DNA of 52,259 bases from the NCBI GenBank assembly GCA_002269645.1, contig NIVC01004270.1:1-52259 (forward strand). Reading direction: 5' to 3'. Under the pieces are notes generated by a model. It did not search any database, had not been told where the DNA came from, and saw only the letters and a list, made by a program, of their open reading frames with translations. How positions within the stretch are numbered: the first letter of the stretch is position 1; each line of letters begins with the position of its first letter. The translations under genes and the position numbers were made by a program. This DNA is from Macrostomum lignano (taxonomy: Eukaryota). This document shows positions 4,924-35,907 of this stretch, piece after piece.

Positions 4924-5640
4924 ATGCTCCTACTGCTCCTGTTCTACCTGTGCAGCCAGCCTGTGTTGCTATGGGCTCAACCGTGCCCAGCTCCATTCAA
5001 ACTCGAGGCAGAAAAATGCCTGTTCGTGAGCACAGCTCAGAGTCACAGCTGGTGCGAGGCCAACCGGCAGTGCGCCGCGATCAAGGGCGAGCTGGTCAAC
5101 TCGTACAGCTCGCTGCAGCTGCTGGCTAGCAACGAAATTCCGAGCGCCAACTGCAACCTGTGGATTGGAGTGAGCGACCTGCCGGATGAAAGAGGCCACA
5201 GCAGGTCCGGCTGGCAGAGGGTTAATGGCAGAGGACAGCTTCCGGAGGACAATTCCGTGTTCAAGTCGGGTGAGCCAAGCGGAGACGACTGCCTGCGACT
5301 GTCCGATACCTCCGGCCGACTTGCCGACACATCCTGCAGCTTCTCTGCCGGGTTTGTCTGCGAGTTTGCTAGCGAGACGAGCGTCCGAAAGCCGTCTGTC
5401 GCCATCTGGAGAGCCGCTGAGTTCAAGCGAGTGCAGTACAACTCCAAGTACTGCTTCAAAGACGTGACGGACGTGAGCAGCGCTATCGAGTGCACAGCGG
5501 CCGCCATGCGCAATGGAAACTGCAGACACGTGCTGTACAACAGCAAGCTGAGAGCCTGCCGCCTGCTGCTGTTCACCGACGCTCAGGTGGAGGAGGAGAT
5601 CGAGACGAGCGCCGACTGGGTCAAGTTCTGTCTCAACTAA
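4924..5640 (+). CDS. Secreted C-type lectin domain + PAN/apple-like domain protein, copy 2 (238 aa, intronless tandem paralog)
   Basis: Same architecture and Cys spacing as 3559-4308; signal peptide MLLLLLFYLC; TATAAAG at 4839-4845. Confidence 0.85.
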   Translation: MLLLLLFYLCSQPVLLWAQPCPAPFKLEAEKCLFVSTAQSHSWCEANRQCAAIKGELVNSYSSLQLLASNEIPSANCNLWIGVSDLPDERGHSRSGWQRVNGRGQLPEDNSVFKSGEPSGDDCLRLSDTSGRLADTSCSFSAGFVCEFASETSVRKPSVAIWRAAEFKRVQYNSKYCFKDVTDVSSAIECTAAAMRNGNCRHVLYNSKLRACRLLLFTDAQVEEEIETSADWVKFCLN

Positions 5641-14700: not shown

Positions 14701-17700
14701 ATTATGTGGACTAAAGGCTTTGCGGCTAAAGGGGTTGTGGGCCATGATGTCTGCAAGCTGCTGCAGGTGAGCGAAACCAATTTTGCAGATTTAAGCTTAA
14801 TCAGGATCAGAATCGGGATCAATATGATTAGAATCGGGATCAACAGGGTCCGAATCGGGATCAACAGGGTCATAATCGGGATCAACAGGATCAGAATCGG
14901 GATCAACGAGATCAGAATCGGGATCAATAACATCAGAATCGGGATCAATAACATTAGAATCGGGATCAATAATCAGAATCGGGATAAACAGGATCAGAAT
15001 CGGGATAAACAGGATCAGAATCGGGATAAAAAGGATCAGAATCGGGATAAACAGGATCAGAATCGGGATAAACAGGATCAGAATCGGGATCGACAGGATC
15101 AGAAACGGGATAAACACGATCAGAATCGGGATCAACAGGATCAGAATCGGGATCAACAGGATCAGAATCGGGATCAATAGGGTCAGAATCGGGATCAACA
15201 GGGTCTGAACTGGGATCTCGATTACTAGTAAACATTTAGTTAAATCCGGCAAACTTTCCAGGAAGCCATCGACAAGGCAGCTTTGCCGATCGTCTGCGTC
15301 GCTCTGGTCAACGACACGGTCGGCACGCTGGCCTCCTGCGCCCTGGAAGATCCTCGCTGCCAAATTGCAGCCATCGTTGGCACGGGCTCCAATGCCGCCT
15401 ACGTTGAGAGACGCTCGTCTATGGAGCGGTACTCGGACAGTCTGGCCGGAGTGTCCGACGGCGGCCCGGACGGTCCGGTGGTTGTCAACACAGAGTGGGG
15501 CAACTTCGGAGCCGACGGCTGCTTGGACCGGTTCCAAACCGACTTTGATAGGGAGATCGATAAGAAGAGTCTTAATCCGGGGTTTCAGGTGCGTGTAGTT
15601 TGGGATTCCACTGCGGGGATTTGGTATGTCCCCATTTAACCTCTTCGCTGTACGGGATTCTGCTGTGGGGATGTGGGATTCTGCTGTAGGGGTGTGGGAT
15701 TCTACCGTAGGGATGAGATTCTACTGTAGGGATGTGAGATTCTACTGTAGGGATGTGGGATTCTACCGTAGGGATGTGAGATTCTACTGTAGGGATGTGG
15801 GATTCTACCGTAGGGATGTGAGATTCTACTGTAGGGATGTGGGATTCTACCGTATGGATGTGAGATTCTACTGTAGGGATGTGGGATTCTACTGTAGGGA
15901 TGTGGGATTCTACCCTAGGGATGTGGGATTCTACCGTAGGGATGTGGGATTCTACTGTAGGGATGTGGGATTCTACTGTAGAGATGTGGGATTCTACCGT
16001 AGGGATGTGAGATTCTACTGTAGGGATGTGGGATTCTACCGTATGGATGTGAGATTCTACTGTAGGGATGTGGGATTCTACCGTATGGATGTGAGATTCT
16101 ACTGTAGGGATGTGGGATTCTACCGTAGGGATGTGGGATTCTACTGTAGGGATGTGGGGTTCTACCCTAGGGATGTGGTATTCTAATGTTGGGATGTGGG
16201 ATTCTACTTTGGGATTAGGGATTCTACTGTGGAGATTTAAGTTTTTCTGAGTACTTTTGGATATGGGATTCTACTGTGGGGATGTTTGTTTCTACTTTCC
16301 AAATTTGTATTTATGTTACTTAATAAGCCTGTTCGAACACCCCCCATTCCTTTCCAACTCAGGTGTTCGAGAAGCTCATCAGCGGCATGTACCTTGGCGA
16401 AATAGTTCGCTTAGCTATCAAATCCCTAGTGGATGATGGCATCATATTTGGCGGCCGCATGCCCGAGTCCCTTGTACAGCCCATGACCTTTCTGACCAAA
16501 TACCTGAGCGAGATTGAGAGAGATCCGCCAAAGCACTACTACAGCACGGACCAGCTGCTCACTGTTGACTTGGGCTTGAAGCTTGTCCATCCCATCGAAG
16601 CTGTCATCGTTCGGAGCATTTGCGAGGCCGTTTCGACCAGGTCCGCTTTTCTGGTTGCTACGGGCATCGCCTCGTTGTTGAAACGGATTAAGCCTAGCGG
16701 TCACGTGACTGTTGGCATCGACGGATCGCTGTTCAAGTTTCATCCGCACTTTCCCGAGCGAATGACACGCAAAGTGCAGGAATTGTGCCCCGATTACGAG
16801 GTGAACTTGAGGCGCTTTTTGCTGCCCTTTTATAGCTTGAGAAATGTATCAGCTGAATCCCGATTTTCAGCATCTGAATCCCGATTCTCAGTACCTGAAT
16901 CCTGATTTTCAGCATCTGAATCCCGATTCTCAGTACCTGAATCCTGATTTTCAGCATCTGAATCCCGATTCTCAGTACCTGAATCCTGATTTTCAGCATC
17001 TGAATCCCGATTCTCAGTACCTGAATCCTGATTTTCAGCATCTGAATCCCGATTCTCAGTACCTGAATCCTGATTTTCAGCATCTGAATCCCGATTCTCA
17101 GTACCTGAATCCTGATTTTCAGCATCTGAATCCCGATTCTCAGTACCTGAATCCTGATTTTCAGCATCTGAATCCCGATTCTCAGTACCTGAATCCTGAT
17201 TTTCAGCATCTGAATCCCGATTCTCAGTACCTGAATCCTGATTTTCAGCATCTGAATCCCGATTCTCAGCATCTGAATCCTGATTTTCAGCATCTGAATC
17301 CCGATTCTCAGTACCAGGGAATCCTATTGGCTCGCTGCGCTCCCCAGGAAGCGACACTGAAAAATGGGGTCTACAAGTTGAGGCCCAAGTCCCCTCCCCA
17401 TTCCCCCAATTTCTTGCCTGGTTAGCATGCCTTTCGCATAAGAAATCGTTGAAAAGAAGTAAACAAAAATAATTAAGACAGTTTCGAAGAAAATATTCGC
17501 TGCATTAATTTAATATATATGTTCTATATTGCTCAATTTTGGAGAATAAATCAATATAAAAATCCTCCATTGCACTGGCAAATGACAGGCAAGAACTCCC
17601 ACTGAAAAGCAATTCTTCAAGACTCATTGACTCCAGTAGGACTACAGACAGACTCACTCACCCGATAACTTTACCTTCTTTCTCTTTAAAGCTTTCTCGT

Positions 17701-20700
17701 TCTTCAAGTTGTCGTTGGTCTCATTCACGAAATTCTTCAGATAGATTCTTGACTGCTGGGGTGAGGATCCTGGAGGAGAAAATAACCCCAGGTCTTCCGC
17801 AAGGACACTTCTGTTTCAGCATGTCGCGGAACTCACCGGATCTGCTGATGCAATCTTGGTAAAGCTCCACGATACTCTGAATGGCTCCTCCTGAGTACAG
17901 CAGATCAGCAGTCAGCAAACTCTTATCCTTCAGGTGGCCGAACACGAAGTAGGATACCTTCATTAAAAGAAACAAGAAGTCACTGGGGCACTTCAGACCA
18001 CAACGATCACGCATCTGGATCAAGGCAAAATCCTCAGCGCGGGCCTCATCATCGGATAGGATTAGGAACTCCAAATAGTCGGCAGTGACCAGGAAGTTCC
18101 TGCAATCCTGGCACTTCAGCTGACCACACAGAGACTTCGCGACATACCCACCAAGATAGGAGCACAGGTTCAGATCAGTTGATGAAAGAGCAGCACTCAG
18201 ATGCTCCAGGCCAGGCAGCGACAAAGACAACAGTTGGCTTGAGAAGTCAGACGGATTTCCTTGATAAAGAATTTGAAAGTCCCTCAGCTTAAGTCCATGA
18301 AACTTGAGCAAGATCGAGATGCGGATCTTCTCCGCCTGAAAGATCTGACGCACGGAAATGAAGAAGTTGCCACCGTGAAATTGGCGGTAGCGACCGAAGC
18401 GGCGCTCAATCCAATCGCTGACAATGCAGCCTGTCAAAACGGAAGGAAACGAATGCTTGGCCAACAGGTGCTCTGTGAGGTCAGCAAGAGTGAGGCAGCA
18501 GGATCTCACGGCTAAGAATGTAGGAGCAGTCAAGCCAGGCAGCTTTGACTTCTCCCATCGATGAAAAAAAGTGGCAAACTGGCGCAGCTTTGAGAGCCTT
18601 GGATCATTTACAACCAACGGAGCAGCGTCCGGAAGCCGCTTCTCCTTTGCCTTCTTCGTGGTCCTAACATTCCACATCGTCCACAGACTCAAAATGAGCT
18701 GTAAGGTGATCAGACCGATGGGAAACCTGTGGAACTTGGCAGCCTCCACTGTGGACTCGCTGAAAACATTGGTATCGTGCTGGACGTTTGTCTCCTCCAG
18801 GTTTGTCGGATTCTGTCGCTGTTGCTTCTTCCTCGCACCGCCTCGTGTCGTTCTCCCGGCGGGTCTCGGCCGATGCCAGCTGAGTGGGGCGCTCCTCAGT
18901 GATGGTCTTGTTCAGGTAGGAGGGTGCATTTGGGAAGATGCAAGGCAGGGCATCAGCGGCTAGACGCCGAAGCTTTAGCTTGCCTGCAGGCTGACCATCT
19001 GCTTCGGTCCGTTTGCGGTGGGGATTGGAGTCCTGAGAGTTGATCACGAAGTACTTCTCAGGGAAGTGAAGCGAGCAGACCCTGTAGCTGTGGTTCGGGT
19101 TTGTTCTCAGCTGCTCCAACTCGGAATCGGTCCACACGCTTGGAATGGCCGTGATCCACTTATTCAGGAGCTCCAACTGCGTAGATGATGGAAAATTGTG
19201 GATAGTCACGGTTGGATTCTTCTCATAGCGAGCATAGTTGATGACGCAGAGGAACGCAGCACTTGTAGCCCATAGTGGGAACGATCAGGTAGTTTCAAAA
19301 TGCGATAGAGTGGAATTGAGAAGACTGCGAGTCAGTGCCCTTCGAGACAAACTCGCAATGTATATAGGGGCAAAGAACAGTGAATAATATGCAGTAGAGT
19401 ACAGTGTGAGGGAAGAACGCACATTAGTTTTCCTATGCACTTCCGTCCCCCAGGAAAGGCTCTTTGTTTCACGAACTCGTACACAGGAGCGCAGCGAGGA
19501 TCTCCTGCCCATTCAGTTTTTTACTGTGCACATAAACTTCGATGTCCTTATTTTTCGTCCCCATTTGTGGGAACCCTCCCTACAAGGAAGGGTTTACTCA
19601 CAAAAACTCCCGCGTCTCTAAGGCTCGAAGGCTTGGGCCTCAACTTGTAGGGGAGGTGGGGTGGGGCGGGACCAGTGTCGGTTCCTGGTGAAACAAATAG
19701 GATTCCCTGTCAGTACCTGAATCCTGATTTTCAGCATCTGAATCCCGATTCTCAGTACCTGAATCCTGATTTTCAGCATCTGAATCCCGATTCTCAGTAC
19801 CTGAATCCTTATTTTCAGCATCTGAATCCCGATTCTCAGTACCTGAATCCTTATTTTCAGCATCTGAATCCCGATTCTCAGCATCTGAATCCTGATTTTC
19901 AGCATCTGAATCCCGATTCTCAGTACCTGAATCCTGATTTTCAGCATCTGAATCCCGATTCTCAGTACCTGAATCCTGATTTTCAGCATCTGAATCCCGA
20001 TTCTCAGTACCTGAATCCTGATTTTCAGCATCTGAATCCCGATTCTCAGTACCTGAATCCTTATTTTCAGCATCTGAATCCCGATTCTCAGTACCTGAAT
20101 CATTATTTTCAGCATCTGAATCCCGATTCTCAGCATCTGAATCCTGATTTTCAGCATCTGAATCCCGATTCTCAGTACCTGAATCCTGATTTTCAGCATC
20201 TGAATCCCGATTCTCAGTACCTGAATCCTGATTTTCAGCATCTGAATCCCGATTCTCAGTACCTGAATCCTGATTTTCAGCATCTGAATCCCGATTCTCA
20301 GTACCTGAATCCTGATTTTCAGCATCTGAATCCCGATTCTCAGTACCTGAATCCTGATTTTCAGCATCTGAATCCCGATTCTCAGTACCTGAATCCTGAT
20401 TTTCAGCATCTGAATCCCGATTCTCAGTACCTGAATCCTGATTTTCAGCATCTGAATCCCGATTCTCAGTACCTGAATCCTGATTTTCAGCATCTGAATC
20501 CCGATTCTCAGTACCTGAATCCTGATTTTCAGCATCTGAATCCCGATTCTCAGTACCTGAATCCTGATTTTCAGCATCTGAATCCCGATTCTCAGCATCT
20601 GAATCCTGATTTTCAGCATCTGAATCCCGATTCTCAGTACCTGAATCCTGATTTTCAGCATCTGAATCCCGATTCTCAGTACCTGAATCCTGATTTTCAG

Positions 20701-22102
20701 CATCTGAATCCCGATTCTCAGTACCTGAATCCTGATTTTCAGCATCTGAATCCCGATTCTCAGCATCTGAATCCTGATTTTCAGCATCTGAATCCCGATT
20801 CTCAGTACCTGAATCCTGATTTTCAGCATCTGAATCCCGATTCTCAGTACCTGAATCCTGATTTTCAGCATCTGAATCCCGATTCTCAGCATCTGAATCC
20901 TGATTTTCAGCATCTGAATCCCGATTCTCAGTACCTGAATCCTGATTTTCAGCATCTGAATCCCGATTCTCAGCATCTGAATCCTGATTTTCAGCATCTG
21001 AATCCCGATTCTCAGTACCTGAATCCTGATTTTCAGCATCTGAATCCCGATTCTCAGTACCTGAATCCAGATTTTCAGCATCTGAATCCCGATTCTCAGT
21101 ACCTGAATCCAGATTTTCAGCATCTGAATCCCGATTCTCAGTACCTGAATCCTGATTTTCAGCATCTGAATCCCGATTCTCAGTACCTGAATCCTGATTT
21201 TCAGCATCTGAATCCCGATTCTCAGTACCTGAATCCTGATTTTCAGCATCTGAATCCCGATTCTCAGTACCTGAATCCTGATTTTCAGCATCTGAATCCC
21301 GATTCTCAGTACCTGAATCCTGATTTTCAGCATCTGAATCCCGATTCTCAGTACCTGAATCCTGATTTTCAGCATCTGAATCCCGATTCTCAGTACCTGA
21401 ATCCTGATTTTCAGCATCTGAATCCCGATTCTCAGTACCTGAATCCTGATTTTCAGCATCTGAATCCCGATTCTCAGTACCTGAATCCTGATTTTCAGCA
21501 TCTGAATCCCGATTCTCAGTACCTGAATCCTGATTTTCAGCATCTGAATCCCGATTCTCAGTACCTGAATCCTGATTTTCAGCATCTGAATCCCGATTCT
21601 CAGTACCTGAATCCTGATTTTCAGCATCTGAATCCTGATTGTCAGTACCTGAATCCTGTTTTTTAGCATCTGAATCCCGATTCTCAGTACCTGAATCCCG
21701 AGTTTCAGTATCTGAATCCCGAGTTTCAGTACCTGAATCCCGAGTTTCAGTATCTGAATCCCGATTCTGAGTATCTGAATCCCGATTCTCAGTATCTGAA
21801 TCCCGATTCTCAGTACCTGAATCCCGATTCTCAGTACTTGAATCCCGATGTCAGACATTTAAATCCCGATTTTAAGTTGTAACTTGTAAATCCCAAGTCT
21901 AAATACCTGGATTCATAATTCTATGCTCAAGACACTTCAGCAGATCCAATGTATAAAAAGGCTTGGATCTTCTCAGACAATCACCGATTTTATTCCCAGA
22001 ATACACAATGGAAAGCCCTCTTGCATTGAATTGCAGTTCACCCTGAAGCTGTCAGAGGACGGCAGCGGCAAAGGGGCGGCTGCTATTGCTGCTCTGGTCT
22101 GA
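11795..22102 (+). CDS. HK: Hexokinase, single-domain about 50 kDa type (464 aa), 6 coding exons
   Basis: Exons 11795-11842, 14077-14358, 14533-14766, 15262-15588, 16363-16800, 22037-22102; all GT-AG and in frame. Motifs [80 protein letters not shown]. The first exon is the least certain. Confidence 0.95.
11884..12811. repeat. About 36-37-bp minisatellite (ATGACACAAGCTGTCTATGACACATCAGTTCCCTAT) in hexokinase intron 1
   Basis: About 25 tandem units, each with an internal ATGACAC duplication. Confidence 0.95.
13298..14040. repeat. 22-23-bp minisatellite with two successive unit types (GGGATCTTGTCACTAGAGGATTC then GGGATCTTGTCATTCAAGGCTTT), hexokinase intron 1
   Basis: Tandem units; type switches near 13560; array ends about 35 bp before the acceptor at 14076. 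Confidence 0.95.
14800..15215. repeat. 21-bp minisatellite (GATCAGAATCGGGATCAACAG) in hexokinase intron 3
   Basis: About 19 tandem units between donor 14767 and acceptor 15261. Confidence 0.95.
15600..16290. repeat. 21-bp minisatellite (GGGATTCTACTGTAGGGATGT) in hexokinase intron 4
   Basis: About 30 tandem units with degenerate edges. Confidence 0.95.
16850..17314. repeat. 42-bp (2x21) minisatellite CAGTACCTGAATCCTGATTTTCAGCATCTGAATCCCGATTCT, left part, hexokinase intron 5
   Basis: About 11 near-perfect units ending at the transposon target site. Confidence 0.95.
17315..19709 (-). mobile_element. P-superfamily (THAP9/Galileo/1360-like) DNA transposon, internally deleted, 2395 bp
   Basis: 14-bp TIRs CAGGGAATCCTATT (17315-17328) and AATAGGATTCCCTG (19696-19709); 7-bp TSD TCAGTAC at 17308-17314 and 19710-19716; encodes a THAP domain and the transposase C-terminal part. 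Confidence 0.9.
17721..19273 (-). pseudogene. THAP-domain transposase pseudogene (frameshifted, central region missing)
   Basis: ATG at 19273: MGYKCCVP, frameshift, then HNFP...KW...RVCSLHF...ALPCIFP (THAP). Near 18812 it joins, in another frame, [11 protein letters not shown]...VFSEST...WNVR...[18 protein letters not shown] (P/THAP9-type C-terminal region with the catalytic Glu). Confidence 0.8.
19710..21870. repeat. 42-bp minisatellite, right part (about 50 units), hexokinase intron 5
   Basis: Same unit as 16850-17314; degenerates into 21-bp units after about 21660. Confidence 0.97.
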
Positions 22103-22954: not shown

Positions 22955-23590
22955 TGCCCCGCCCCCACAGCCAGCTGGTTCTGACCCCACCCCACAGCCA
23001 GCCAATTCTAACCCCACACCACAACCAATCAAATCCAAGCCCCACCCCACAGCCAGCCAATTCTAACCCCCACCCCACAGCCAGCCAATTCTAACCCCCA
23101 CCCCACAGCCAGTCAATTCTAACCCCACACCACAACCAATCAAATCCAAGCCCCACCCCACAGCCAGCCAATTCTGACCCCTACCCCACAGCCAGCCAAT
23201 TCTAACCCCCACCCCACAGCCAGCCAATTCTGATCCCCACACCACAGCCAGCCAAACCCCACCCCACAGCCAGCCAGTTCTAACCCCACCCCACAGCCAG
23301 CCAAACCCCACCCCACAGCCAGCCAATTCTAACCCCCACCCCACAGCCAGCCAATTCTAACCCCACCCCATAGCCAGCCAATTCTAACCCCCACCCCACA
23401 GCCAGTCAATTCTAACCCCACACCACAACCAATCAAATCCAAGCCCCACCCCACAGCCAGCCAATTCTGACCCCTACCCCACAGCCAGCCAATTCTAACC
23501 CCCACCCCACAGCCAGCCAATTCTGATCCCCACACCACAGCCAGCCAAACCCCACCCCACAGCCAGCCAATTCTAACCCCCCAGCAGCCA
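22955..23590. repeat. C-rich about 27-bp minisatellite (CCCCACCCCACAGCCAGCCAATTCTAA) with an about 290-bp higher-order duplication
   Basis: Tandem units; the variant GCCAGTCAATTCTAACCCCACACCACAACCAATCAAATCC recurs at about 23109 and 23401. Confidence 0.9.
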
Positions 23591-24253
23591 TCCATTTAGT
23601 CCACGGCTTTAAATCTAAGAAATGACACGGTTTAAACAGCAATTACAAAAAATTCCAGCTGTATTCTCACATCTAAACGCCGCCATGTACTGCTGCTTCA
23701 GTTCTGCGATTTTATTTACCAAACCTCTTCGCTGTAATCCAGGTTTATTTTGGTCCAAAGACAAGTCAAAGTGCTAAAAACTAAACATGGATTGCTAATT
23801 TTTTATGCCAGTCAATATATTAGCGGCGCGTGTTTTCATTTTCTGCGCTGCTTAGCCAGTAAATAAAAAAGTATTTTAGTAGCTATTCTTTGCCGTATTT
23901 TTGTCTCTTCACAGTAAGCCTCATTGCTATCTGGTGTCAGAATTTCTGGTTTGTTTTGAAATGCTTGAATTGAAAGCCACCCCAAATCCCCTTCCCTCGG
24001 ATCTGTTTCTTTAGCTCTGTTCCAGAAAATTCCGCGCTTATAATCTTGTCTGTTTTATACAGCAATGATACTGACTAAATCTTTTGAAGAGTTGAATAAA
24101 CAAAAAAGAACAGTTTGATATTGATATTAAAAATGCTTTCTAGCAAAATAACGCATCGTTTGCTGTGATTTTAATTTTTTTTATTAGTCAATAAAAATAA
24201 TCAATTTCTACTCTACGAATTTAGTCCTTGATTAAGTGCGAATTTTTGCAGCA

Positions 24254-25920
24254 TCAATCAACAAAGATCAAGTCTCTACTAAGAGACGAAAACACGCGCG
24301 TAGTGCAGATTTGTTCCTCTTCCTGTTGCTGCACGTCTTTAGCTGCATGCGACAGGCAAGCCGGGAGATCAATCCGATGCGGATCTGCCGTGATTCGATT
24401 CGCCAGAGCCTTCAAAACCTTCAAACAACCGCAGCAATCGTCACCAGATTCCGCAGTCTCTAGGGAGTAGCCGTAATGGATAAATAAATCTTTGTTCAGG
24501 CGACCTGCACTACTCAAATGATCCATTGGCAGCAGAGCATTCGGGTTTTCAGTTTCGTCGTGTTGCAAAATTAGCAAAATTTTCGGCTTCCCGTTGAGGC
24601 TGCAGCAGTCGATGAGCGGCTGGAGCAGGGCGGCGGGATTGGCAGAAATCTGGGCGATGGCAGGGGCGGACCTGTGCAGTAGCAGCATCACGGCTAGACA
24701 GTCTGTCTGGCTGTGTTCCACACTGTCTACTATAAGTAGGAAAATAGGATTGGTAGAATAATGAATCACGAAATTCTAATCTAGATGATGCGAAAGGTGT
24801 GCTAATCTAGATGATAAAGGAGTGCCAATTTAATCTAGACGATAAAGGTGTGCTAATCTAGATGATAAAGGAGTGCCAATTTAATCTAGACGATAAAGGT
24901 GTGCTAATCTAGATGATAAAGGAGTGCCAATTTAATCTAGACGATAAAGGTGTGCTAATCTAGATGATAAAGGAGTGCCAATTTAATCTAGATGATAAAG
25001 GAGTGCCAAATGATCGCCCATGTACTAGGCAAAAATTTAGTATTGTGGACTAGCACAGTGCCCCCCACAGAGTTCTCACCTGCCCGAAGCTCGCTCAGGA
25101 TGTCATCCAACTTATCGAGATTAAAAAACGAGTGCGTGATAAAGCCGAGACCTCGAAGCAGGTCACGAGCGGCGCGTTGTGCAGCCGAACTGCTTGTCGA
25201 TTCAAATTGTTGGTGAAAGAAGCAAAATACCAGAGCATAACGGCGCCGGCTGCTTCTGCTGATGGTGGCCTCCTGAGCACTCGGTGCGGATGGCGGTGTG
25301 CATGTCTTCTGTGAACTAAAAAACGTTTTGTTTTATTGAAATGCAATTTAGGAAACACGCATAAGAAAGGATGCAGCATACTGTCGACTGTACATGTACA
25401 AGTATGTGAGATACATGTACCTGGTAATGGCTTCTGTCTGTTTAATTTATAAATAGCAACTGCCCTGTAGTATTCGGTGCCATTTTCGCACAAGAGTAAT
25501 AATTAATTTTTCAATTTTTCGATAATAATAATATCAATAATATTAATACCTTGAAAATCTTCTTTGTTTCTACGTATACAATACATGCGATTAACGCTCA
25601 CCAACTCAGGCCTAAATTAGCACCATTAGTAACGGTCGAAAACACCTGCTGAGATCCAGCAGTGTCGCAGTCGCCAACATCGAAGCCACCTCGTTTCTGT
25701 CGCCCTGACGACCAGCAGGTACAGGCAAACAGCCTCTTCATCTTGGCTATCGCTAAGACAATTGTGTTGAATAAACGATAACTGCAGGGAAAACTTTCGC
25801 TTTAAGAAACGATATTATACGATTTTATATCTGCACTTATTTGTTACATATCCATGTATATATAGACGGAAGAGCGGCGTCACACACGCACACACACAGA
25901 AAGACCTACATGAAATCCAT
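24254..25920 (-). CDS. Caspase-fold (peptidase C14-like) protein lacking the catalytic Cys; putative pseudo-caspase, about 300 aa, 4 exons
   Basis: Exons 25920-25910, 25781-25602, 25315-25080, 24729-24254; GT-AG, phases compatible, 903 nt with no internal stop. Caspase landmarks in order: RRYALVF, DLLRGLGF...FNL, DCLAVMLLLH, LNGKPKILLILQ, DLFIHY, SSLSRDLIF. The two 5' exons are less certain than the last two. Confidence 0.7.
24777..25010. repeat. 51-bp (28+23) tandem repeat AATCTAGATGATAAAGGAGTGCCAATTT/AATCTAGACGATAAAGGTGTGCT in the caspase-like gene intron
   Basis: About 4.5 dimer units between donor 25079 and acceptor 24730. Confidence 0.9.
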
Positions 25921-26624: not shown

Positions 26625-27250
26625 CCCTAATCTAAAACCAGAAGACACCCCAATCTAAAAGCAGAAGACACGGCCCAATCTAAAAGCAGAAGAAACCCCA
26701 ATCTAAAACCAGAACAAATCCCAAACTAAAAGCAGAAGACACTCCAATCTAAAACCAGAAGACACCCCAAGCTAAAAGCAGAAGACACCCCAATCTAAAA
26801 GCAGAAGACACGGCCCAATCTAAAAGCAGAAGACACGGCCCAATCTAAAAGCAGAAGACACGGCCCAATCTAAAAGCAGAAGGCACCCCAATCTAAAACC
26901 AGAAGAAACCACAAACTAAAACTAGAAGACACCCCAATCTAAAAGCAGAACAAATCCCAAACTAAAAGCAGAAGACACTCCAATCTAAAACCAGAACAAA
27001 TCCCAAACTAAAAGCAGAAGACACTCCAATCTAAAACCAGAAGACACCCCAAGCTAAAAGCAGAAGACACTCAATCTAAAAGCAGAAGACAGCCCAGGCT
27101 AAAAGCAGAAGACACTCCAATCTAAAAGCAGAAGACACTTCCAATCTAAAAGCAGAAGAAACACCAAACTAAAAGCAGCAGACACTCAATCTAAAAGCAG
27201 AAGACACGCCAGGCTAAAAGCAGAAGACACTCCATCCAAAAGCAGAGAAA
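26625..27250. repeat. 22-24-bp minisatellite (CCAATCTAAAAGCAGAAGACAC)
   Basis: About 27 tandem units immediately 3' of the methyltransferase stop codon. Confidence 0.93.
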
Positions 27251-27262
27251 CAGCGGTTCACA

Positions 27263-30200
27263 TCAAGCCACCAGGACAAGAAACAATTTCACACCTCTGT
27301 TCAACACCGGCCGACAGTTCACCAACATATGCGGCCTATCAGTTAGCGCGGCGGCATTCATCACCATGGCAACCTGTTCCACACCAGTAGGATAGAACTG
27401 CATAACAGTTAAACCGCCGGGTCTGACAATTCCTGTAGCATTGCTTAGCAAAACAAAGGCCGTTGATTGTCCCCCGCTTAGCAGGCACTGCATCGCGGAC
27501 ACTGAGACTGCCGAGTCAGCCATCCCACGCCTGACAGGCCATTGCTGTTTAGTCAGATCGCAGCGGACCTGATAATAGCAATTGCCAGCTAACAGGGTCT
27601 TTGTTGGTCTTTGTTGTTGTTGTTGTTGGTTAAAATCGGCAGGCAAGCAGAGATCCAGGCCCAGCACTGGTAGTTCGGGCGGCAGCCGAGCCACCGGGCC
27701 GCAGCCAATGTCGGCCACAAGGTGGTCGGACGGAACTGTCCGAGGCACCCCGGCAAGTGCCAAGGCCGTGGTGTACAGCGGCTGTTGAATCCGCTCGACT
27801 CTGGTTGATAAGCTGCCGTCGCTTGCAATGGCACAGGCTTGGAGAGGATCTGGAGGTAAAATCAATTCATTATCGAAAAATAGATAATTCGCGACTGGCA
27901 ATGATTGGCGTTGGCAGGGGCAGAGCGGTCAATTGAGTCGCCTAGGCGTGCGGAAGGTCCCGGGTTCGAGTCCCGAATAAGTGATTTTCTGGCGATTCTT
28001 GGAGTGGTTTGTGGGGCGATTCTTGGTGGTTTGTGGGGCGATTCTTGGGGTGGTTTGTGGGGCGATTCTTGGGGTGGTATGTGGGGCGATTCTTGGAGTG
28101 GTTTGTGGGGCGATTCTTGGAGTGGTTTGTGGTGCGATTCTTGGAGTGTTTGTGGGGCGATTCTTGGAGTGGTTTGTGGGGCGATTCTTGGGGTGGTTTG
28201 TGGGGCGATTCTTGGAGTGGTTTGTGGGGCGATTCTTGGTGGTTTGTGGGGCGATTCTTGGGGTGGTATGTGGGGCGATTCTTGGGGTGGTATGTGGGGC
28301 GATTCTTGGGGTGGTTTGTGGGGCGATTCTTGGGGTGGTATGTGGGGCGATTCTTGGAGTGGTTTGTGGTGCGATTCTTGGAGTGGTTTGTGGGGCGATT
28401 CTTGGTGGTTTGTGGGGCGATTCTTGGAGTGGTTTGTGGGGCGATTCTTGGAGTGTTTGTGGGGCGATTCTTGGAGTGGTTTGTGGGGCGATTCTTGGTG
28501 GTTTGTGGGGCGATTCTTGGAGTGGTTTGTGGGGCGATTCTTGGAGTGGTTTGTGGGGCGATTCTTGGAGTGGTTTGTGGGGCGATTCTTGGAGTGGTTT
28601 GTGGGGCGATTCTTGGTGGTTTGTGGGGCGATTCTTGGAGTGGTTTGTGGGGCGATTCTTGGTGGTTTGTGGGGCGATTCTTGGAGTGGTTTGTGGGGCG
28701 ATTCTTGGTGGTTTGTGGGGCGATTCTTGGAGTGGTTTGTGGGGCGATTCTTGGAGTGGTTTGTGGGGCGATTCTTGGTGGTTTGTGGGGCGATTCTTGG
28801 AGTGGTATGTGGGGCGATTCTTGGGGTGGTATGTGGGGCGATTCTTGGAGTGGTTTGTGGGGCGATTCTTGGAGTGGTTTGTGGGGCGATTCTTGGAGTG
28901 GTTTGTGGGGCGATTCTTGGTGGTTTGTGGGGCGATTCTTGGAGTGGTATGTGGGGCGATTCTTGGGGTGGTATGTGGGGCGATTCTTGGAGTGGTTTGT
29001 GGGGCGATTCTTGGAGTGGTTTGTGGGGCGATTCTTGGTGGTTTGTGGGGCGATTCTTGGGGTGGTATGTGGGGCGATTCTTGGGGTGGTATGTGGGGCG
29101 ATTCTTGGAGTGGTTTGTGGGGCGATTCTTGGAGTGGTTTGTGGGCGATTCTTGGAGTGGTTTGTGGGGCGATTCTTGGAGTGGTTTGTGGGGCGATTCT
29201 TGGAGTGTTTGTGGGGCGATTCTTGGAGTGGTTTGTGGGGCGATTCTTGGAGTGGTATGTGGGGCGATTCTTGGAGTGGTTTGTGGTGCGATTCTTAGGG
29301 TGGTTTGTGGGGCGATTTTTGGAAGGGAACTGGTTTGTGGGCGATTCTTGGAGTGGTTTGTGGGGCGATTCTTGGAGTGGTTTGTGGGGCGATTCTTGGA
29401 GTGGTTTGTGGGGCGATTCTTGGAGTGGTTTGTGGGGCGATTCTTGGAGTGGTTTGTGGGGCGATTCTTGGAGTGGTATGTGGGGCGATTCTTGGAGTGG
29501 TTTGTGGGGCGATTCTTGGAGTGGTTTGTGGGGCGATTCTTGGTGGTTTGTGGGGCGATTCTTGGAGTGGTTTGTGGGGCGATTCTTGGAGTGGTTTGTG
29601 GGGCGATTCTTGGTGGTTTGTGGGGCGATTCTTGGGGTGGTATGTGGGGCGATTCTTGGGGTGGTATGTGGGGCGATTCTTGGAGTGGTTTGTGGGGCGA
29701 TTCTTGGAGTGGTTTGTGGGCGATTCTTGGAGTGGTTTGTGGGGCGATTCTTGGAGTGGTTTGTGGGGCGATTCTTGGAGTGTTTGTGGGGCGATTCTTG
29801 GAGTGGTTTGTGGGGCGATTCTTGGAGTGGTATGTGGGGCGATTCTTGGAGTGGTTTGTGGTGCGATTCTTAGGGTGGTTTGTGGGGCGATTTTTGGAAG
29901 GGAACTGGTTTGTGGGCGATTCTTGGAGTGGTTTGTGGGGCGATTCTTGGAGTGGTTTGTGGGGCGATTCTTGGAGTGGTTTGTGGGGCGATTCTTGGAG
30001 TGGTTTGTGGGGCGATTCTTGGAGTGGTTTGTGGGGCGATTCTTGGAGTGGTTTGTGGGGCGATTCTTGGAGTGGTTTGTGGGGCGATTCTTGGAGTGTT
30101 TGTGGGGCGATTCTTGGAGTGGTTTGTGGGGCGATTCTTAGGGTGGTTTGTGGGGCGATTTTTGGAAGGGAACTGGTTTGTGGGCGATTCTTGGAGTGGT

Positions 30201-30514
30201 TTGTGAGGCGATTTTTGAGGTTAAGACTAGAAGGAGGAACTCTAAACTGTCTCAGAATTTACACAGCAATAGTGAAGCTGCATGAAAAAGACCAACACAA
30301 GTTTTCGATCGTCAGCCACACCTGGAACTCGGTTCTCCGGTCGGCGCGGACTTCTAATCCGCCGCAGTCCGCGCACAACCTGGCGCCAACAGGGCGCCAG
30401 ACAGACCGGCGCCATCAGAGACAAATGGCTGCGCAGTCGTGTCAGAGCAGACATCAATTGCGGATGAGGGCCCGAAGGCATTGCCGCCAATGCCTCAACC
30501 TTCTTGACAACCAT
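27263..30514 (-). CDS. BUD23/WBSCR22-like class I SAM-dependent methyltransferase, about 259 aa, 2 exons
   Basis: Exons 30514-30322 and 27849-27263 (donor CCAG|GTGTGG, acceptor TTTTACCTCCAG|; phase 1 on both sides). Motifs RRPE, ERIQ, VADIGCG (motif I), GLDL, DSAVSVSAMQCL, VMQFYP...EQ, KLFLVL follow the BUD23 order. Confidence 0.75.
27907..27979 (+). pseudogene. Degenerate tRNA-Pro(AGG)-like sequence or SINE head, antisense in the methyltransferase intron
   Basis: TCGCCTAGGCGTGCGGAAGGTCCCGGGTTCGAGTCCCG aligns with the anticodon and T arms of eukaryotic tRNA-Pro; B-box intact; D arm and acceptor stem do not pair cleanly. Confidence 0.5.
27985..30215. repeat. 24-bp minisatellite (GTTTGTGGGGCGATTCTTGGAGTG), about 90 units, in the methyltransferase intron
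   Basis: Tandem units with 22-24-bp variants; the variant block TTTTTGGAAGGGAACTGG recurs at about 29316, 29891 and 30159. Confidence 0.97.
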
Positions 30515-31517: not shown

Positions 31518-32769
31518 TTAAACTACTTTAATTCTGCGGGATGTATTCAGATAAATCCTGGAGCCATACTTGTATTTCTATGGTTGAATTTGGTGATGGG
31601 GGTGTGGTGGCGAAGCCCCCACATTCTGACCATAGAAAAATTTCATTAAGAAATTTCTTGAGTCACGAAGGAAGAGAAGAGAGAAACTCGCTTATTTAGA
31701 TACATACAATAATCCTTGCAACATGTCCGGGAAAGTGATCGATTAAATCCCGCAAAATAAAATCTATGTCAATAACCTCCCTGAAAGTGAGCTTTAAAGT
31801 GGTTTAAAATAAGATATACATACATAGGAGAGTTACGGGTGAACAGAGTTGAATCTTAGGCCCAATTCACAATTTCAGCAATTCAAATAAGTAAGCAAAA
31901 TTATTTTTTTTTCAACTCAAAACAGAGTGCACTGACTCAATCAATTTTATTAATTTTTTGAAAAAGAAATTAACCAAAAAATCATCCATTCAGTAATGTA
32001 AATAATTAAATAGCATTAATTTTTTAGCATGAAACCATCTTTTATTGGCTGGCACCAGATCAAAACAAGTACACTGAGGAATTTCTTGACAAAGCATTGA
32101 AACAGATGCAAGAATAAAAGAAATAAAGTATAACTGTAAGTGACCCAAGACAATTACGAAGGCACAGTGGCAGCTAAAAATGAAGAACCTATGAAATCTA
32201 TAAAAGCATAATTGAAAATTCATTAAATGTGCATTTTTATCTGGTGAATAAAATAAAGTACAAGAAAGCACTCCCAACACCTGTAAACTGAATTGGATGA
32301 AATAGATAATAAAAAACTAAATTGCACCAAAAACTTGACAATATTTCTATTAATAATATTAGGAAGACAAAATAAAAAAACTGACAAAACTTGCTAAACA
32401 TTCTACTGACGCAATTAAGTGGTTATTAAGTAGTAAAATGAGTAAAATTCCTATTTTAACACGAAGCAAAGCGCTTTATAATTTATAATTTATTAATTAT
32501 CTTTATTTTAATGGCACTAATGATCTGGCAAGAGAGCTAAATTAGAGAATTCAGAGACCGATGTCGATTGCAGTTGGTGAAGGTCAGAAATTATGTTGCT
32601 AAATAAAACTACCATTTAAGGAATTTATATCAAACTGATAAATTGGGTTAACATACTTTATAGCTCTGAGTAGCTGTGACTTCTATACGTGATGCAAAAT
32701 TCTCAGGGAAAGAGATGGTGACAGGAAGAGAGAGAGGGGGGACGGACAAGACAGAATTGGAGAGTACGA

Positions 32770-33680
32770 AGAGGAGGGAGAGGAGGAGAGGAGAGGAGAG
32801 AGGGAGAGAGGGGAGAGGAGAGGAGAGGAGAGGAGAGAGGGAGAGAGGGGAGAGGGGAGAGGAGAGGGGAGAGGAGAGAGGGGAGAGGAGAGGAGAGAGG
32901 GAGAGAGGGGAGAGGGGAGAGGAGAGGAGAGGAGAGGAGAGAGGGAGAGAGGGGAGAGGGGAGAGGAGAGGGGAGAGGAGAGGGAGAGAGGGGAGAGGAG
33001 AGGAGAGAGGGAGAGGGGAGGAGAGGGGAGAGGAGAGGGGAGAGGAGAGGGAGAGGAGAGGGAGAGAGGGGAGAGGAGAGGGAGAGAGGGGAGAGGAGAG
33101 GAGAGAGGGAGAGAGGGGAGAGAGGGAGAGAGGGGAGAGAGGGAGAGAGGGGAGAGGGGAGAGGAGAGGGAGAGGGGAGAGGAGAGGGAGAGAGGGGAGA
33201 GGAGAGGAGAGAGGGAGAGAGGGGAGAGGGGAGAGGAGAGGAGAGGAGAGGAGAGAGGGAGAGAGGGGAGAGGGGAGAGGAGAGGGGAGAGGAGAGGGGA
33301 GAGGAGAGGGAGAGAGGGGAGAGGAGAGGGAGAGAGGGGAGAGGAGAGGGAGAGAGGGGAGAGGAGAGGAGAGAGGGAGAGAGGGGAGAGAGGGAGAGAG
33401 GGGAGAGGGGAGAGGAGAGGGAGAGGGGAGAGGAGAGAGGAGAGGAGAGGGAGAGAGGGGAGAGGAGAGGAGAGAGGGAGAGAGGGGAGACGAGAGAAGA
33501 GAGGGAGAGAGGGGAGAGGAGAGGGAGAGGGGAGAGGAGAGGGGAGAGTAGAGGGGAGAGGAGAGGGGAGAGAGGGGAGAGAGAAGAGAGGGAGATGATA
33601 GGAGAGAGAAGAGAGAGAGAGGGAAGAAAGGAGAAGAGAGGGAGAGGGGAGAGGACAGAAAGGGAGGGAAGAGAGGAGAG
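32770..33680. repeat. Polypurine (GA-rich) low-complexity tract, about 0.9 kb
   Basis: Almost only G and A on the + strand (GGAGA/GGGGAGA units). Confidence 0.97.
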
Positions 33681-33815
33681 GATTAGGGGGTAAGTAGATT
33701 GAAGAAACTAATTGAAAAAAGCAGCAAAAATGAATACACAAATTACAAAAAACAAATACCCATCAGAGCAAGCAGTCAAGCTAAACCATATCCCTTAGTC
33801 ACACGATGACAGATG

Positions 33816-35272
33816 TTAAAATCGTTTTTTCCTCTCGTCCAGACTGACTCCGCCAGGTCCCACGGCCACCACAAGCAGCAGGCCGCCAATAACCGACATA
33901 GTCTGGAAGAAGTCGAAGCGCATCACATCACGCCTAGTAGACGTAGCCGCCAAACTCCACCAGGGATTGGCAATCAAATTGATGATTAATAATTTCAACG
34001 AAGCAGCCAGTGCGCATAATTTTGTCTTATAACCGACTGCTATGAGTAGTACTAGCAGCAGGTCAATGCCGAAATTCAGCATGTAGACAGCGGTGTCAAA
34101 CCTGGCCAGGGTGGCCAGCATTAGCAGGACCAGCAGGCGACCAGACAGCAGCAGCCAACGGCGGTGCCGGCCGCCTTCGCCTGTGCTGGGCAATCCAGCA
34201 AACAGGGAGCGGGCCTCCACCCTGCCAGGGGGGAGACAGGTAAGTGTACAGCTATGTTATTGGAATAACTTGTTGAGGCAAAACTTAGACAGAATTTAGG
34301 CGCTCAAATCGTCATAGTATAAATCCATGAGTTACAAGATTTCAGTGGGATCCCCTCTGTGGAACCCTCCAGTAGAATCTCCCTTAAGTAGAATATTCCC
34401 CCTCCAGTGGAATATCCCCATCCAGTGGAATATTCCCTCCATTGGAATATCCCCTTTAATGGAATATCCCTCTTTAGTGGAATATCCCCTCACCTACAGC
34501 GAAATATTTCCACACAGTGAAATATTCACCTCCAGTGGAATATCCCCTCCAGTGGAATATCCCCTCCAGTGGAATGTCCCCTCCAGTGGAATATCTCCTC
34601 CAGTGGAATATCCCTCTGATGGAATATCCCCTTTAGTGGAAAATATCCCCTCCAGTGGAATTCTCATTCAGTGAATCAACTCTTAGAAGAATTCCCTTCA
34701 AATTTAACTTCCCTTTTAATGGAATCCCCCCCTAAGTTGAGTTCCCCTATGGTGGAATCAACAATTAGTAGAACCCCACATCAGTGGAATCCCCTTCAGT
34801 GAAATCCCACTCAGAAGAGTGAAATTTTACACAATTGAGTCACTTTCTATCAGCATCTGTTTCATTTAGATAAGCAGCTAGTCAAGGAGCAATCTTTCCC
34901 AACTAATGCCACTCACCTGGACTCAACAAAGAGAAGCAGAACGCCACCGCCAATGGCCAAATTTCTCAATAGAAAATTGGACTCCCACAGAATCTGGTAG
35001 GCAACAGACTGCAGCAGCAGTACAGAGGCCAGCATAGCGCAAGCAATTTCAACGCGACACCGGAGCAGCACCATAGCACAGCCAGCCAGTTGCAAAACCA
35101 TGTTGGCAATTACAAAACTGTGCCCAGCAACTGCCGGAGCATTCCACTGGTGCTGAATGTACTCAGCCTGATCAGACCACTGCACCCACATTCGAATTCC
35201 ATCTTCTAAGTAGGTGCTAATTAGGCATAGGCGAGCCACAGTTGGTATAAGATGTTTGCTTCGGCGTAGCAC
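33816..35272 (-). CDS. SURF4: Surfeit locus protein 4 (ER cargo receptor, Erv29 family); first short exon not located
   Basis: Exons 35272-34917 and 34221-33816 (phase 2, R codon split). VARLCLISTYLEDGIRMW.QW, RNLAIGGG.LLL..ESR, GYKTKL, DFFQTMSVIGGLLLVVA.GPGGVSLDERKKRF with C-terminal di-lysine motif. Confidence 0.93.
34345..34815. repeat. 17-19-bp minisatellite (GGAATATCCCCTCCAGT) in the SURF4 intron
   Basis: Degenerate tandem units between acceptor 34222 and donor 34916. Confidence 0.85.
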
Positions 35273-35907
35273 CTGTTGTAATATAACAAAATTAATCTTT
35301 GTATTGAATAATAACTAATTAATTAACAAGCTTTTGCTAGAAGGTACTGCCACGTCATATATGCGCAACACCCACTTGATCTGGTTGGCTGGTGAGGGGC
35401 CCAGCTAAGTTAAGGCACCTTAAACATAGTGGGCCATTCCATATAATTATGGTTGTAACATGACAGACTATTTTTACGTATAAAATGAAATCTAATAATA
35501 GAATATACTAAACCAATATTTTGAATGAAAGATTATTTTGTCAAGAATATGTTTATAAAGTTTCATATAGATACATCATTAGTATAGATGCTATTAAACC
35601 TTGAATGGCACTTATGGTTGTAACAACAGGATTTTTGACATATAGAAACTAAAAGGTAAAAGTCTTATAACATTTTTCATTTTTGATATTTTGCAAAAAT
35701 TTTTTTTTAAATTTGACTAAGAACATCTTTAGAAGTCATACTCTTTTATTAGAATATATAAACTCAAAAAGGCAACAAAGATACAAAAGAAAAGGCAGCC
35801 TTATGGTTGTAACATTATGGTTGCTAATGTTTTTAGCTGATGATACAGGTACTATAATTTTATTTATAGTTTGTTTTAACCTTCTAAAGCTTTCTATTTG
35901 TTTTTAA

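What the first reader, a model, noticed from the sequence alone, without database searches (positions are those of the whole stretch)
24254..25920. Intact spliced gene for a catalytically dead caspase-fold protein
Seen: four GT-AG exons splice into a stop-free ORF of about 300 aa; the ORF track shows only the last exon in the right frame. Caspase p20/p10 landmarks are in order, but SHG reads LHR and QACRG reads LQHDE, so the nucleophile Cys is absent. The N-terminus shows no recognisable CARD or DED. Known: c-FLIP and C. elegans CSP-2/CSP-3 are inactive caspase homologues that regulate active caspases. Inference: a lineage-specific caspase inhibitor or scaffold that automated annotation could easily miss. 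Best candidate for a new regulatory component in this window.
Basis: partly seen in the sequence, partly recalled or inferred. Interest (0 to 1): 0.75.

Follow-up and report, generated by a model that had tools for sequence, protein, structure and literature searches.

The report
Dead caspase paralogue in a flatworm
This is a real, transcribed, spliced gene of the flatworm Macrostomum lignano that encodes a very diverged caspase-fold protein with no catalytic cysteine; it is one of several such dead copies in a genome with well over a hundred caspase domains, it is already in the databases, and nothing yet shows that it does anything.

Summary
The window is a whole contig of the Macrostomum lignano genome. 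Minus-strand GT-AG exons splice into a stop-free frame with caspase p20 and p10 landmarks. SHG reads LHR, QACRG reads LQHDE (Cys to His), both S1-pocket arginines are gone, and there is no CARD or DED.

Corrections:
- The 11-nt first exon is unsupported. The database models start at ATG 25741, giving 283 aa, or 266 aa with an alternative junction.
- The gene is not unannotated. It is NCBI PAA89807.1 (BOX15_Mlig030275g2, a model derived from RNA-seq) and UniProt A0A1I8G143 ("CASPASE_P20 domain-containing").
- It is the second gene of a two-gene transcriptional unit, downstream of a methyltransferase-like gene.

Homology to caspases is secure (hhalign 96.4%, caspase-6 E=4.6e-6, Foldseek hits are effector caspases), although the Pfam score falls below the curated cut-off. 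The protein is an extreme long-branch orphan with no orthologue outside this species. It is present in all three subgenomes.

Recent evolution looks unconstrained: 8-9 nonsynonymous against 2 synonymous changes, omega about 1.2, compared with 0.05 for neighbouring SURF4. One copy has a 94-nt out-of-frame insertion under the RNA-seq junction. Yet the open frame cannot have survived such deep divergence by drift.

Verdict: a new member of the known pseudo-caspase kind. A regulatory role is possible but untested.

The parts
25602..25741 (-). Coding exon 1 of the supported model. ATG at 25741-25739 (MKRLFACTCW...). It ends before the donor GTGAGC at 25601. An alternative in-frame donor (CAG|GTGTTT) ends the exon at 25646.
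   Evidence: The UniProt model P0002 starts at this Met. NCBI model P0001 reads through it.
25742..25784 (-). 5' leader with candidate (trans-)splice acceptor AGs. Further AGs nearer the ATG differ between the three copies.
   Evidence: The annotated C137 mRNA starts right after a copy-specific AG, and the gene is '.g2' of a transcriptional unit.
25910..25920 (-). Not supported as coding sequence.
   Evidence: Absent from both public models. Its downstream acceptor is mutated in C926.
25316..25601 (-). Intron 1 (286 nt, GT...AG). The alternative intron is 25309-25645 (337 nt).
25080..25315 (-). Coding exon 2: low-complexity linker, then the start of the caspase p20 region (RRYALVF... to ...SELRA). 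It includes ESTSSS, where the S1 arginine (caspase-6 Arg64) is replaced by Ser.
24730..25079 (-). Intron 2 (350 nt, GT...AG). It contains a 51-bp tandem repeat of 4.2 copies at 24793-25006.
24254..24729 (-). Coding exon 3: the rest of p20, the linker and the p10-like region. TGA stop at 24256-24254.
   Evidence: The splice sites are identical in all three genomic copies.
24668..24685 (-). LLLHRS, the counterpart of the (L)SHG motif. The catalytic His is retained (His144 of the 283-aa model). The following Gly is replaced by Arg.
24554..24568 (-). LQHDE, the counterpart of QACRG. Gln becomes Leu and the nucleophile Cys becomes His182.
24443..24490 (-). DLFIHYGYS-LETAESG, the counterpart of DFLxxYST..GYxSWR. 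There is no Arg or Trp, so the second S1 arginine is absent.
24180..24185 (-). AATAAA polyadenylation signal, 68 nt after the stop codon.
   Evidence: sequence. Its function is inferred.
27263..27928 (-). Upstream cistron of the same transcriptional unit: a methyltransferase-like ORF (BOX15_Mlig030275g1).
   Evidence: 97% identical to the NCBI g1 protein on C137, and a paralogue is named 'Methyltransf_11 domain-containing'.
26625..27246 (.). 23-bp minisatellite (about 27 copies) lying between the two cistrons.

Best explanation
The locus is gene 2 of the two-gene transcriptional unit Mlig030275 of Macrostomum lignano. It has three coding exons on the minus strand (25741-25602, 25315-25080, 24729-24254) and encodes 283 aa, or 266 aa with an alternative in-frame junction.

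The product has a ~70-residue disordered N-terminus followed by a complete p20 plus p10 caspase fold of the short-prodomain (effector) type. It has lost every residue needed for aspartate-directed cysteine proteolysis:
- nucleophile Cys to His;
- the Gln of QACRG to Leu;
- the Gly after the catalytic His to Arg;
- both S1 arginines absent.

It therefore cannot be a caspase enzyme (shown from sequence). It arose inside a very large, species-level caspase expansion and is by far its most diverged member.

Inferred mechanism: if it acts at all, it acts by binding. The most likely mode is pairing through the caspase dimer interface with an active short-prodomain paralogue and tuning its activation. 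This is what the Aedes decoy CASPS18 does to CASPS19, and what FLIP(L) does to caspase-8.

I put about 0.9 on the identity (a transcribed pseudo-caspase). I put about 0.3-0.35 on it still having a selected regulatory function. The stated confidence blends the two.
For: Organism and gene identity:
- The only close hit is M. lignano PAA89807.1 (96% identity).
- The contig belongs to the 764-Mb assembly, which matches Mlig_3_7 (PMC5730564).

Transcription and splicing:
- NCBI BOX15 models derive from a genome-guided RNA-seq assembly cut at trans-splice and poly(A) sites (PMC5730564).
- g1 and g2 are adjacent on the same strand.
- All GT-AG sites are conserved in the three copies.
- AATAAA lies 68 nt after the stop.

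Caspase homology:
- phmmer against caspase-6, E=4.6e-6 over 163 residues.
- hhalign 96.4%, E=1.4e-9.
- AF2 with a caspase MSA gives pLDDT 80-93 over residues 79-290.
- The top 50 Foldseek hits are all caspases, nearly all effector-type (Sf-caspase-1, caspase-7/-6/-3, a coral caspase), probability 1.0.

Dead site:
-.
- There is no Cys in the 30 residues after GKPK.

Long-term coding constraint:
- The terminal branch is 5.35 substitutions per site, against 1.74 or less for 59 other caspases.
- Simulated neutral substitution keeps the frame open with P=0.005 at only 0.2 substitutions per site.
- The ORF is intact in 2 of 3 subgenome copies under the RNA-seq junction, and in 3 of 3 under the alternative junction.

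Precedents for the binding mode:
- CASPS18 is a decoy that enhances CASPS19 (PMC4840389, citing Bryant et al. 2010).
- FLIP(L) (PMC7586951).
Against: There is no evidence of present purifying selection.
- Window versus C137 gives Sd=2 and Nd=8-9, omega 1.2-1.4.
- Omega of 0.2 or less is rejected (P=0.005-0.011).
- SURF4 in the same synteny block has omega 0.05.

Other points against:
- The C926 copy carries a 94-nt out-of-frame insertion in exon 1 under the RNA-seq-supported junction, and it has lost an upstream AG.
- No orthologue or close paralogue is known, so conservation across species cannot be shown.
- The Pfam score (19.6 bits) is under the curated cut-off of 21.4.
- The fold model was built on a caspase MSA, so it is not independent. 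The single-sequence model failed (pLDDT 36).
- No partner, expression pattern or phenotype is known.
- Dead caspase homologues can lack any detectable phenotype. The reported CSP-3 role was not replicated (PMC3591282).
Confidence: 0.55

Rival explanations
1. An expressed relic in decay. This caspase paralogue once evolved under selection, perhaps as a regulator, but is now drifting towards pseudogene status in a genome that has been triplicated and already holds dozens of caspases. Transcription is a by-product of lying downstream in a polycistronic unit.
For: - Omega is about 1.2, with 8-9 nonsynonymous against 2 synonymous changes, exactly the neutral expectation.
- C926 has a 94-nt frameshifting insertion and has lost an acceptor.
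- C137 has a 6-nt indel.
- The candidate 5' acceptor AGs turn over between copies.
- The upstream cistron g1 also shows omega of about 1.
- There are no orthologues.
- The gene has the longest branch in the family.
- It falls below the Pfam cut-off.
Against: - Only 10-11 substitutions are available, so omega of 0.5 cannot be rejected (P=0.15-0.2).
- The window and C137 copies are fully intact, with every splice site and the poly(A) signal.
- All three copies are intact under the alternative junction.
- The core fold elements and hydrophobic pattern are still recognisable.
- The depth of divergence with an open frame needs long past constraint.
Confidence: 0.38
2. One reading: four coding exons and 300 aa, with translation starting at ATG 25920 in an 11-nt first exon that is cis-spliced to 25781.
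For: The frame is open, and GT (25909-25908) and AG (25783-25782) are present in the window and in C137.
Against: - The RNA-seq-derived model starts 17-19 nt downstream of that acceptor, directly after a different AG.
- The UniProt model starts at Met 25741.
- The acceptor reads CAA in C926.
- The gene is the downstream cistron of a transcriptional unit whose members are separated at trans-splice sites.
- An 11-nt initial coding exon is found easily by chance.
Confidence: 0.05
3. It is still a hydrolase that uses a non-canonical nucleophile or dyad, for example His182 together with His144, or a distant Cys.
For: The catalytic His is kept. A His sits at the nucleophile position, next to Asp-Glu.
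Against: - No Cys lies within 30 residues after the beta-strand that carries the nucleophile.
- Both S1 arginines and the Gln of QACRG are lost, so the Asp-binding pocket is gone.
- From general knowledge, no clan CD peptidase is known to work with His as nucleophile.
Confidence: 0.02

Closest known systems
Aedes aegypti CASPS18 (caspase-like decoy; Bryant et al. 2010, as cited in PMC4840389)
   Same: A short-prodomain, effector-type caspase paralogue. It lacks catalytic capacity, is lineage-restricted, and arose by duplication within an expanded arthropod or flatworm caspase set. It is the best architectural analogue.
   Different: CASPS18 has an identifiable active sister (CASPS19), which it enhances and with which it is co-expressed. 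The flatworm protein has no recognisable sister: its best identity to any caspase is 21%. No partner is known. The two arose independently.
FLIP(L) / CFLAR, the human pseudo-caspase (PMC7586951)
   Same: A full p20 plus p10 caspase-like domain with the nucleophile Cys replaced. It acts by heterodimerising with an active caspase.
   Different: FLIP(L) has tandem DEDs and derives from the caspase-8/-10 initiator lineage. The flatworm protein has no DED or CARD. Its closest matches by sequence and fold are effector caspases.
C. elegans CSP-3 and CSP-2 (PMC3591282)
   Same: Caspase homologues without protease function, proposed to restrain CED-3.
   Different: CSP-3 lacks an active site altogether, and its anti-apoptotic role was not reproduced. 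CSP-2 retains a VCCRG motif (PMC3591282). I recall that CSP-3 resembles only the small subunit, but I did not verify this here. The flatworm protein keeps both subunit regions.
Other dead-site caspases in the same genome (L040/L044, QTSQK; L075, QTHRD)
   Same: Same species and same family. The nucleophile is lost, and L075 has the same Cys to His change.
   Different: They still score above 88 bits on Pfam Peptidase_C14 and sit within ordinary clades on short branches. The window gene is not specifically related to them.

Membership tests
Caspase family (MEROPS C14A / Pfam PF00656 Peptidase_C14), as a homologue | Significant sequence similarity to the caspase domain | tested here: met
   phmmer against caspase-6, E=4.6e-6. 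hhalign 96.4% probability, E=1.4e-9. phmmer against 1.84 billion representatives returns only caspases.
Caspase family (MEROPS C14A / Pfam PF00656 Peptidase_C14), as a homologue | Score above Pfam's curated gathering cut-off (21.4 bits) | tested here: not met
   19.6 bits, E=8e-4, covering only profile positions 2-125.
Caspase family (MEROPS C14A / Pfam PF00656 Peptidase_C14), as a homologue | Caspase-hemoglobinase alpha/beta fold with both p20 and p10 regions | tested here: inconclusive
   The MSA-based AF2 model has pLDDT 80-93 in the core, and Foldseek returns only caspases (TM 0.6-0.7 normalised to target). But the MSA consisted of caspases, and the single-sequence model failed.
Active caspase (cysteine-dependent aspartate-directed protease) | Catalytic Cys in QACXG | tested here: not met
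   LQHDE, with His at the Cys position. There is no Cys within 30 residues.
Active caspase (cysteine-dependent aspartate-directed protease) | Catalytic His in SHG | tested here: met
   The His is retained (LHR), but the Gly is replaced by Arg.
Active caspase (cysteine-dependent aspartate-directed protease) | S1 pocket Arg (p20), Gln (QACXG) and Arg (SWR) that bind the P1 Asp | tested here: not met
   The p20 Arg is Ser and the Gln is Leu. There is no Arg in the YSLETAESGDD segment.
Pseudo-caspase regulators (FLIP(L)/CASPS18-type) | Caspase-like domain lacking catalytic residues | tested here: met
   See the rows above.
Pseudo-caspase regulators (FLIP(L)/CASPS18-type) | Physical pairing with, and modulation of, an active caspase | not testable with these tools
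   No complex prediction or experiment was available, and no candidate sister caspase could be identified.
Pseudo-caspase regulators (FLIP(L)/CASPS18-type) | Evolutionary constraint on the non-catalytic protein | tested here: inconclusive
   Omega is about 1.2 on 10-11 substitutions between homeologues. However, the open frame has been retained across a 5.35 substitutions-per-site branch.
Initiator caspases (CARD, DED or ANK prodomain) | Recognisable recruitment prodomain | tested here: not met
   Pfam finds nothing in residues 1-88 even at E of 10 or less. The N-terminus is predicted disordered.

The most novel reading that the evidence does not exclude
The protein is a functional, Macrostomum-specific caspase-fold adaptor or decoy. 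It is co-transcribed with a methyltransferase-like gene and kept in all three subgenomes. It tunes one branch of this flatworm's exceptionally large caspase repertoire, for example in stem-cell turnover, regeneration or immunity. Its omega of about 1 would then reflect rapid adaptive change rather than decay.
Probability: 0.2. Interest if true: 0.5.

Novelty: new member of a known kind. Interest (0 to 1): 0.3.

Why it matters
Pseudo-caspases are few but influential regulators of cell death; FLIP(L) and CASPS18 are examples. A flatworm example would extend the idea to a regeneration model with a very large caspase family. Cell-death control there has been little studied and differs from that in flies, nematodes and mammals (PMC11463336).

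On present evidence, however, this gene is an already-annotated, species-restricted and apparently unconstrained family member. Its main value is as one data point showing that dead-site caspases arise repeatedly in the M. lignano expansion. At least three independent lineages were seen here.

Tried and rejected
- I used the 96%-identical public paralogue P0001 instead.
- **Single-sequence AF2.** Uninformative, pLDDT 36.
- **Contig look-up.** The look-up of encoding contigs for P0001 returned nothing; records of the window's own genome appear to be withheld.
- **Orthologue and paralogue searches.** These covered 5.8 billion clustered proteins, 1.84 billion representatives and the organism's own genome. 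They found only the three genomic copies and generic caspases.
- **Frameshift idea.** I considered that LQHDE might be a frameshift artefact hiding QACRG. The other two frames of that stretch give a stop and FANFATRRN, so I rejected it (read from the sequence).
- **C926 as a plain pseudogene.** I considered this reading, but the UniProt junction places its 94-nt insertion inside the intron, so I left it open.
- **Gene conversion.** I considered that the low divergence of the 24.2-28 kb tract shows gene conversion. The published genome-wide subgenome divergence is 1.9-2.4% (PMC10733133), so the tract is not exceptional, and I make no such claim.
- **Invalid row.** The lectin1 row compared paralogues (wrong HSP) and should be ignored. 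The first hexokinase segment includes non-coding sequence.
- **Literature.** Look-ups for Mlig030275 in papers and held supplements found nothing.

Full report
**What the window is.** The 52,259-bp window is the whole of contig C4270 of a 764-Mb, 5,269-contig eukaryotic assembly. The only close protein match to the finding is a Macrostomum lignano entry. The assembly size and contig count agree with the published Mlig_3_7 assembly of this free-living flatworm (PMC5730564).

**Checking the observation.** Each is bounded by GT...AG, and together they give 903 nt, or 300 codons, with no internal stop.

The product is a caspase homologue:
- Pfam Peptidase_C14, E=8e-4. At 19.6 bits this is just below the curated 21.4-bit cut-off.
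- phmmer against PDB chains gives about twenty caspase-6 sequences at E of about 5e-6 to 2e-4, over residues 88-250. Weaker hits follow to insect effector caspases and reconstructed ancestral effector caspases.
- Profile-profile comparison with a nine-sequence caspase alignment gives 96.4% probability, E=1.4e-9.

**The catalytic residues.** All three alignment methods agree on the following.
- LLLHRS lies on (L)SHG. The His is kept and the Gly becomes Arg.
- GKPKILLILQHDE lies on GKPKxFxIQACRG. The Gln becomes Leu and the nucleophile Cys becomes His.
- MAFFT on a larger set instead gaps the loop. That does not matter, because there is no Cys in the 30 residues following GKPK.
- The p20 S1 arginine is Ser. 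The YS-WR segment reads YSLETAESG, with no Arg.
- No CARD, DED or any other domain is detected. Residues 1-70 are predicted disordered.

**Correcting the gene model.** Two public models exist.
- NCBI PAA89807.1 ('hypothetical protein BOX15_Mlig030275g2, partial', 292 aa) is the copy on contig C137.
- In C137 that start point lies immediately after an AG preceded by a pyrimidine-rich run.
- UniProt A0A1I8G143 ('CASPASE_P20 domain-containing protein', a 107-aa fragment) starts at that Met. It joins GSQQ|KTCTPP, using donor CAG|GTGTTT after 25646 and acceptor TTCACAG| before 25308.
The acceptor that exon needs reads CAA in the C926 copy.
- BOX15 models come from a genome-guided RNA-seq assembly (StringTie/TACO). 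Transcriptional units in it were cut into genes at mapped trans-splice and poly(A) sites (PMC5730564).
- The ORF immediately upstream on the same strand (27263-27928) is BOX15_Mlig030275g1, a methyltransferase-like protein.

The best-supported anatomy is therefore a downstream cistron of a two-gene unit with three coding exons. It encodes 283 aa, or 266 aa with the alternative junction, and has AATAAA 68 nt after the stop. The gene is transcribed and spliced, and it had not been missed by annotation.

**Copies and constraint.** The genome holds exactly three copies: the window, C926 and C137. This fits the three homeologous subgenomes described for the sequenced line, which differ by about 1.9-2.4% in single-nucleotide changes (PMC10733133). 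The window is collinear with C137:194.8-233.1 kb.
- Window and C926 differ by one amino acid. C926 also has a 94-nt insertion flanked by a ~25-nt duplication. This insertion is frameshifting under the RNA-seq junction but intronic under the alternative one.
- Window and C137 differ by 2 synonymous and 8-9 nonsynonymous substitutions plus a 6-nt in-frame indel. That gives pS of about 0.010, pN of about 0.013 and omega of 1.2-1.4.
- This is exactly the neutral expectation. Omega of 0.2 or less is rejected (P=0.005-0.011). Omega of 0.5 is not rejected.
- As an internal control over the same pair, SURF4 has pS 0.067 and omega 0.05. The clean hexokinase exons are 98.5-99.4% identical in protein.
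- The co-transcribed g1 also shows omega of about 1, on four substitutions.

**Deep history.** I sampled 58 caspase domains from the more than 160 Peptidase_C14 matches in this genome.
- Nearly all keep the Arg, the His-Gly and the Cys-Arg.
- Exceptions are L040/L044 (QTSQK) and L075 (QTHRD, with SHG reading GCG). Dead sites therefore arise repeatedly here.
- The window gene is not specifically related to those copies.
- In a maximum-likelihood tree its terminal branch is 5.35 substitutions per site, against 1.74 or less for all others. No supported clade holds it, and its best identity to any sampled caspase is 21%.
- Simulated neutral substitution keeps this frame open with probability 0.06 at 0.1 substitutions per site, and 0.005 at 0.2.

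So the divergence must have accumulated largely under selection for an open frame. The gene was a functional protein-coding gene for most of its history, whatever its status now.

**Fold.** With a 58-sequence caspase MSA under the C137 protein, AlphaFold2 gives pLDDT 80-93 across residues 79-290. The model shows the alternating strand-helix pattern of a caspase. Foldseek against the PDB returns only caspases, led by Sf-caspase-1, caspase-7, -6 and -3 and a coral caspase (probability 1.0; TM 0.6-0.7 normalised to target). This is supportive but not independent, because the MSA was made of caspases and the single-sequence run failed.

**How it most likely works.**
- Shown: it cannot perform caspase chemistry.
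- Inferred: any activity is by binding. The closest architectural precedent is Aedes CASPS18, a prodomain-less decoy that enhances its active paralogue CASPS19 (PMC4840389). FLIP(L) pairs with caspase-8 in the same way (PMC7586951).
- I consider pairing with an active short-prodomain paralogue through the dimer interface the most likely mechanism if the gene is functional.
- The serious rival is that it is now an expressed relic. The C. elegans precedent shows that dead caspase homologues may have no reproducible phenotype (PMC3591282).

**Comparison and novelty.** It is a homologue of family C14 but not an active member. It is a new, independently derived member of the known pseudo-caspase kind. 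No paper in the searchable library mentions the gene. The lophotrochozoan apoptosis survey that included M. lignano returned no passage about pseudo- or inactive caspases in a term search (PMC11463336).

**Verdict.** The claimed gene start and the 'unannotated' claim are wrong. Interest is modest, about 0.3. The family-level picture is arguably more interesting than this single gene: a very large caspase expansion with recurrent catalytic death, and a possible ankyrin-caspase.

Noticed in passing
G000 genome-wide (table): There are at least 162 Peptidase_C14 matches in the assembly. Most are complete caspase domains in single uninterrupted ORFs. Even allowing for three subgenomes, this is a very large caspase repertoire for a flatworm.
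   Followed up: partly
L040/L044 (G000:C1680:29738-30421 and C1035:214896-215579); L075 (G000:C166:137364-137906): Other caspase paralogues have dead active sites: QTSQK (Cys to Ser), and QTHRD (Cys to His) with GCG in place of SHG. They are otherwise well conserved and unrelated to the window gene, so catalytic loss is recurrent in this family.
   Followed up: partly
L002 (around G000:C59:26450-27154) and L005 (around G000:C3507:86748-87452): A 305-319-aa ankyrin-repeat ORF abuts a caspase ORF (QACRP) on the same strand. This suggests an ankyrin-prodomain caspase in a free-living flatworm. PMC11463336 reports ANK caspases as restricted to parasitic flatworms.
   Followed up: no
window 27263-27928 (-): The upstream cistron BOX15_Mlig030275g1 is methyltransferase-like. 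A 73%-identical paralogue is named 'Methyltransf_11 domain-containing', but this ORF has no Pfam hit at E of 1e-3 or less. It too shows omega of about 1 between homeologues (1 synonymous and 3 nonsynonymous changes).
   Followed up: partly
L015 (G000:C926:329500-334500), exon 1 of the C926 copy: A 94-bp insertion flanked by a ~25-bp direct duplication (GCAGGTGTTTTCGACCGTTACTAATG). It is made of short TAATG/GTTAATG-like units. It is absent from the window and C137 copies.
   Followed up: yes
window 23000-23581, 24793-25006, 26625-27246, about 19600-21900, about 27900-30250, about 32650-33760: Many minisatellite arrays with periods of 23-51 bp, some with extreme strand skew. They produce long spurious ORFs in all six frames. 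One sits inside intron 2 of the gene, and others fill the hexokinase introns.
   Followed up: partly
window 46588-50256 (-): Long ORFs whose sequence looks like retrotransposon Gag-zinc-knuckle, protease, reverse-transcriptase and integrase regions, suggesting an LTR (Ty3/gypsy-type) element. This was judged by eye from the translations and was not searched against any library. It is absent from the syntenic C137 block.
   Followed up: no
window 3532-4308 and 4903-5640 (+); 13990-16905 (+); 33816-35314 (-): Neighbouring genes: a tandem pair of C-type lectin genes (one with a weak PAN match), a hexokinase, and SURF4. SURF4 is strongly constrained between homeologues (omega 0.05).
   Followed up: partly
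window 17721-19284 (-): Two long ORFs (396 aa and 206 aa). Pfam finds nothing in the 396-aa one. It is absent from the aligned C137 block (no megablast match for 17.3-19.7 kb), so it is possibly a mobile-element insertion.
   Followed up: no
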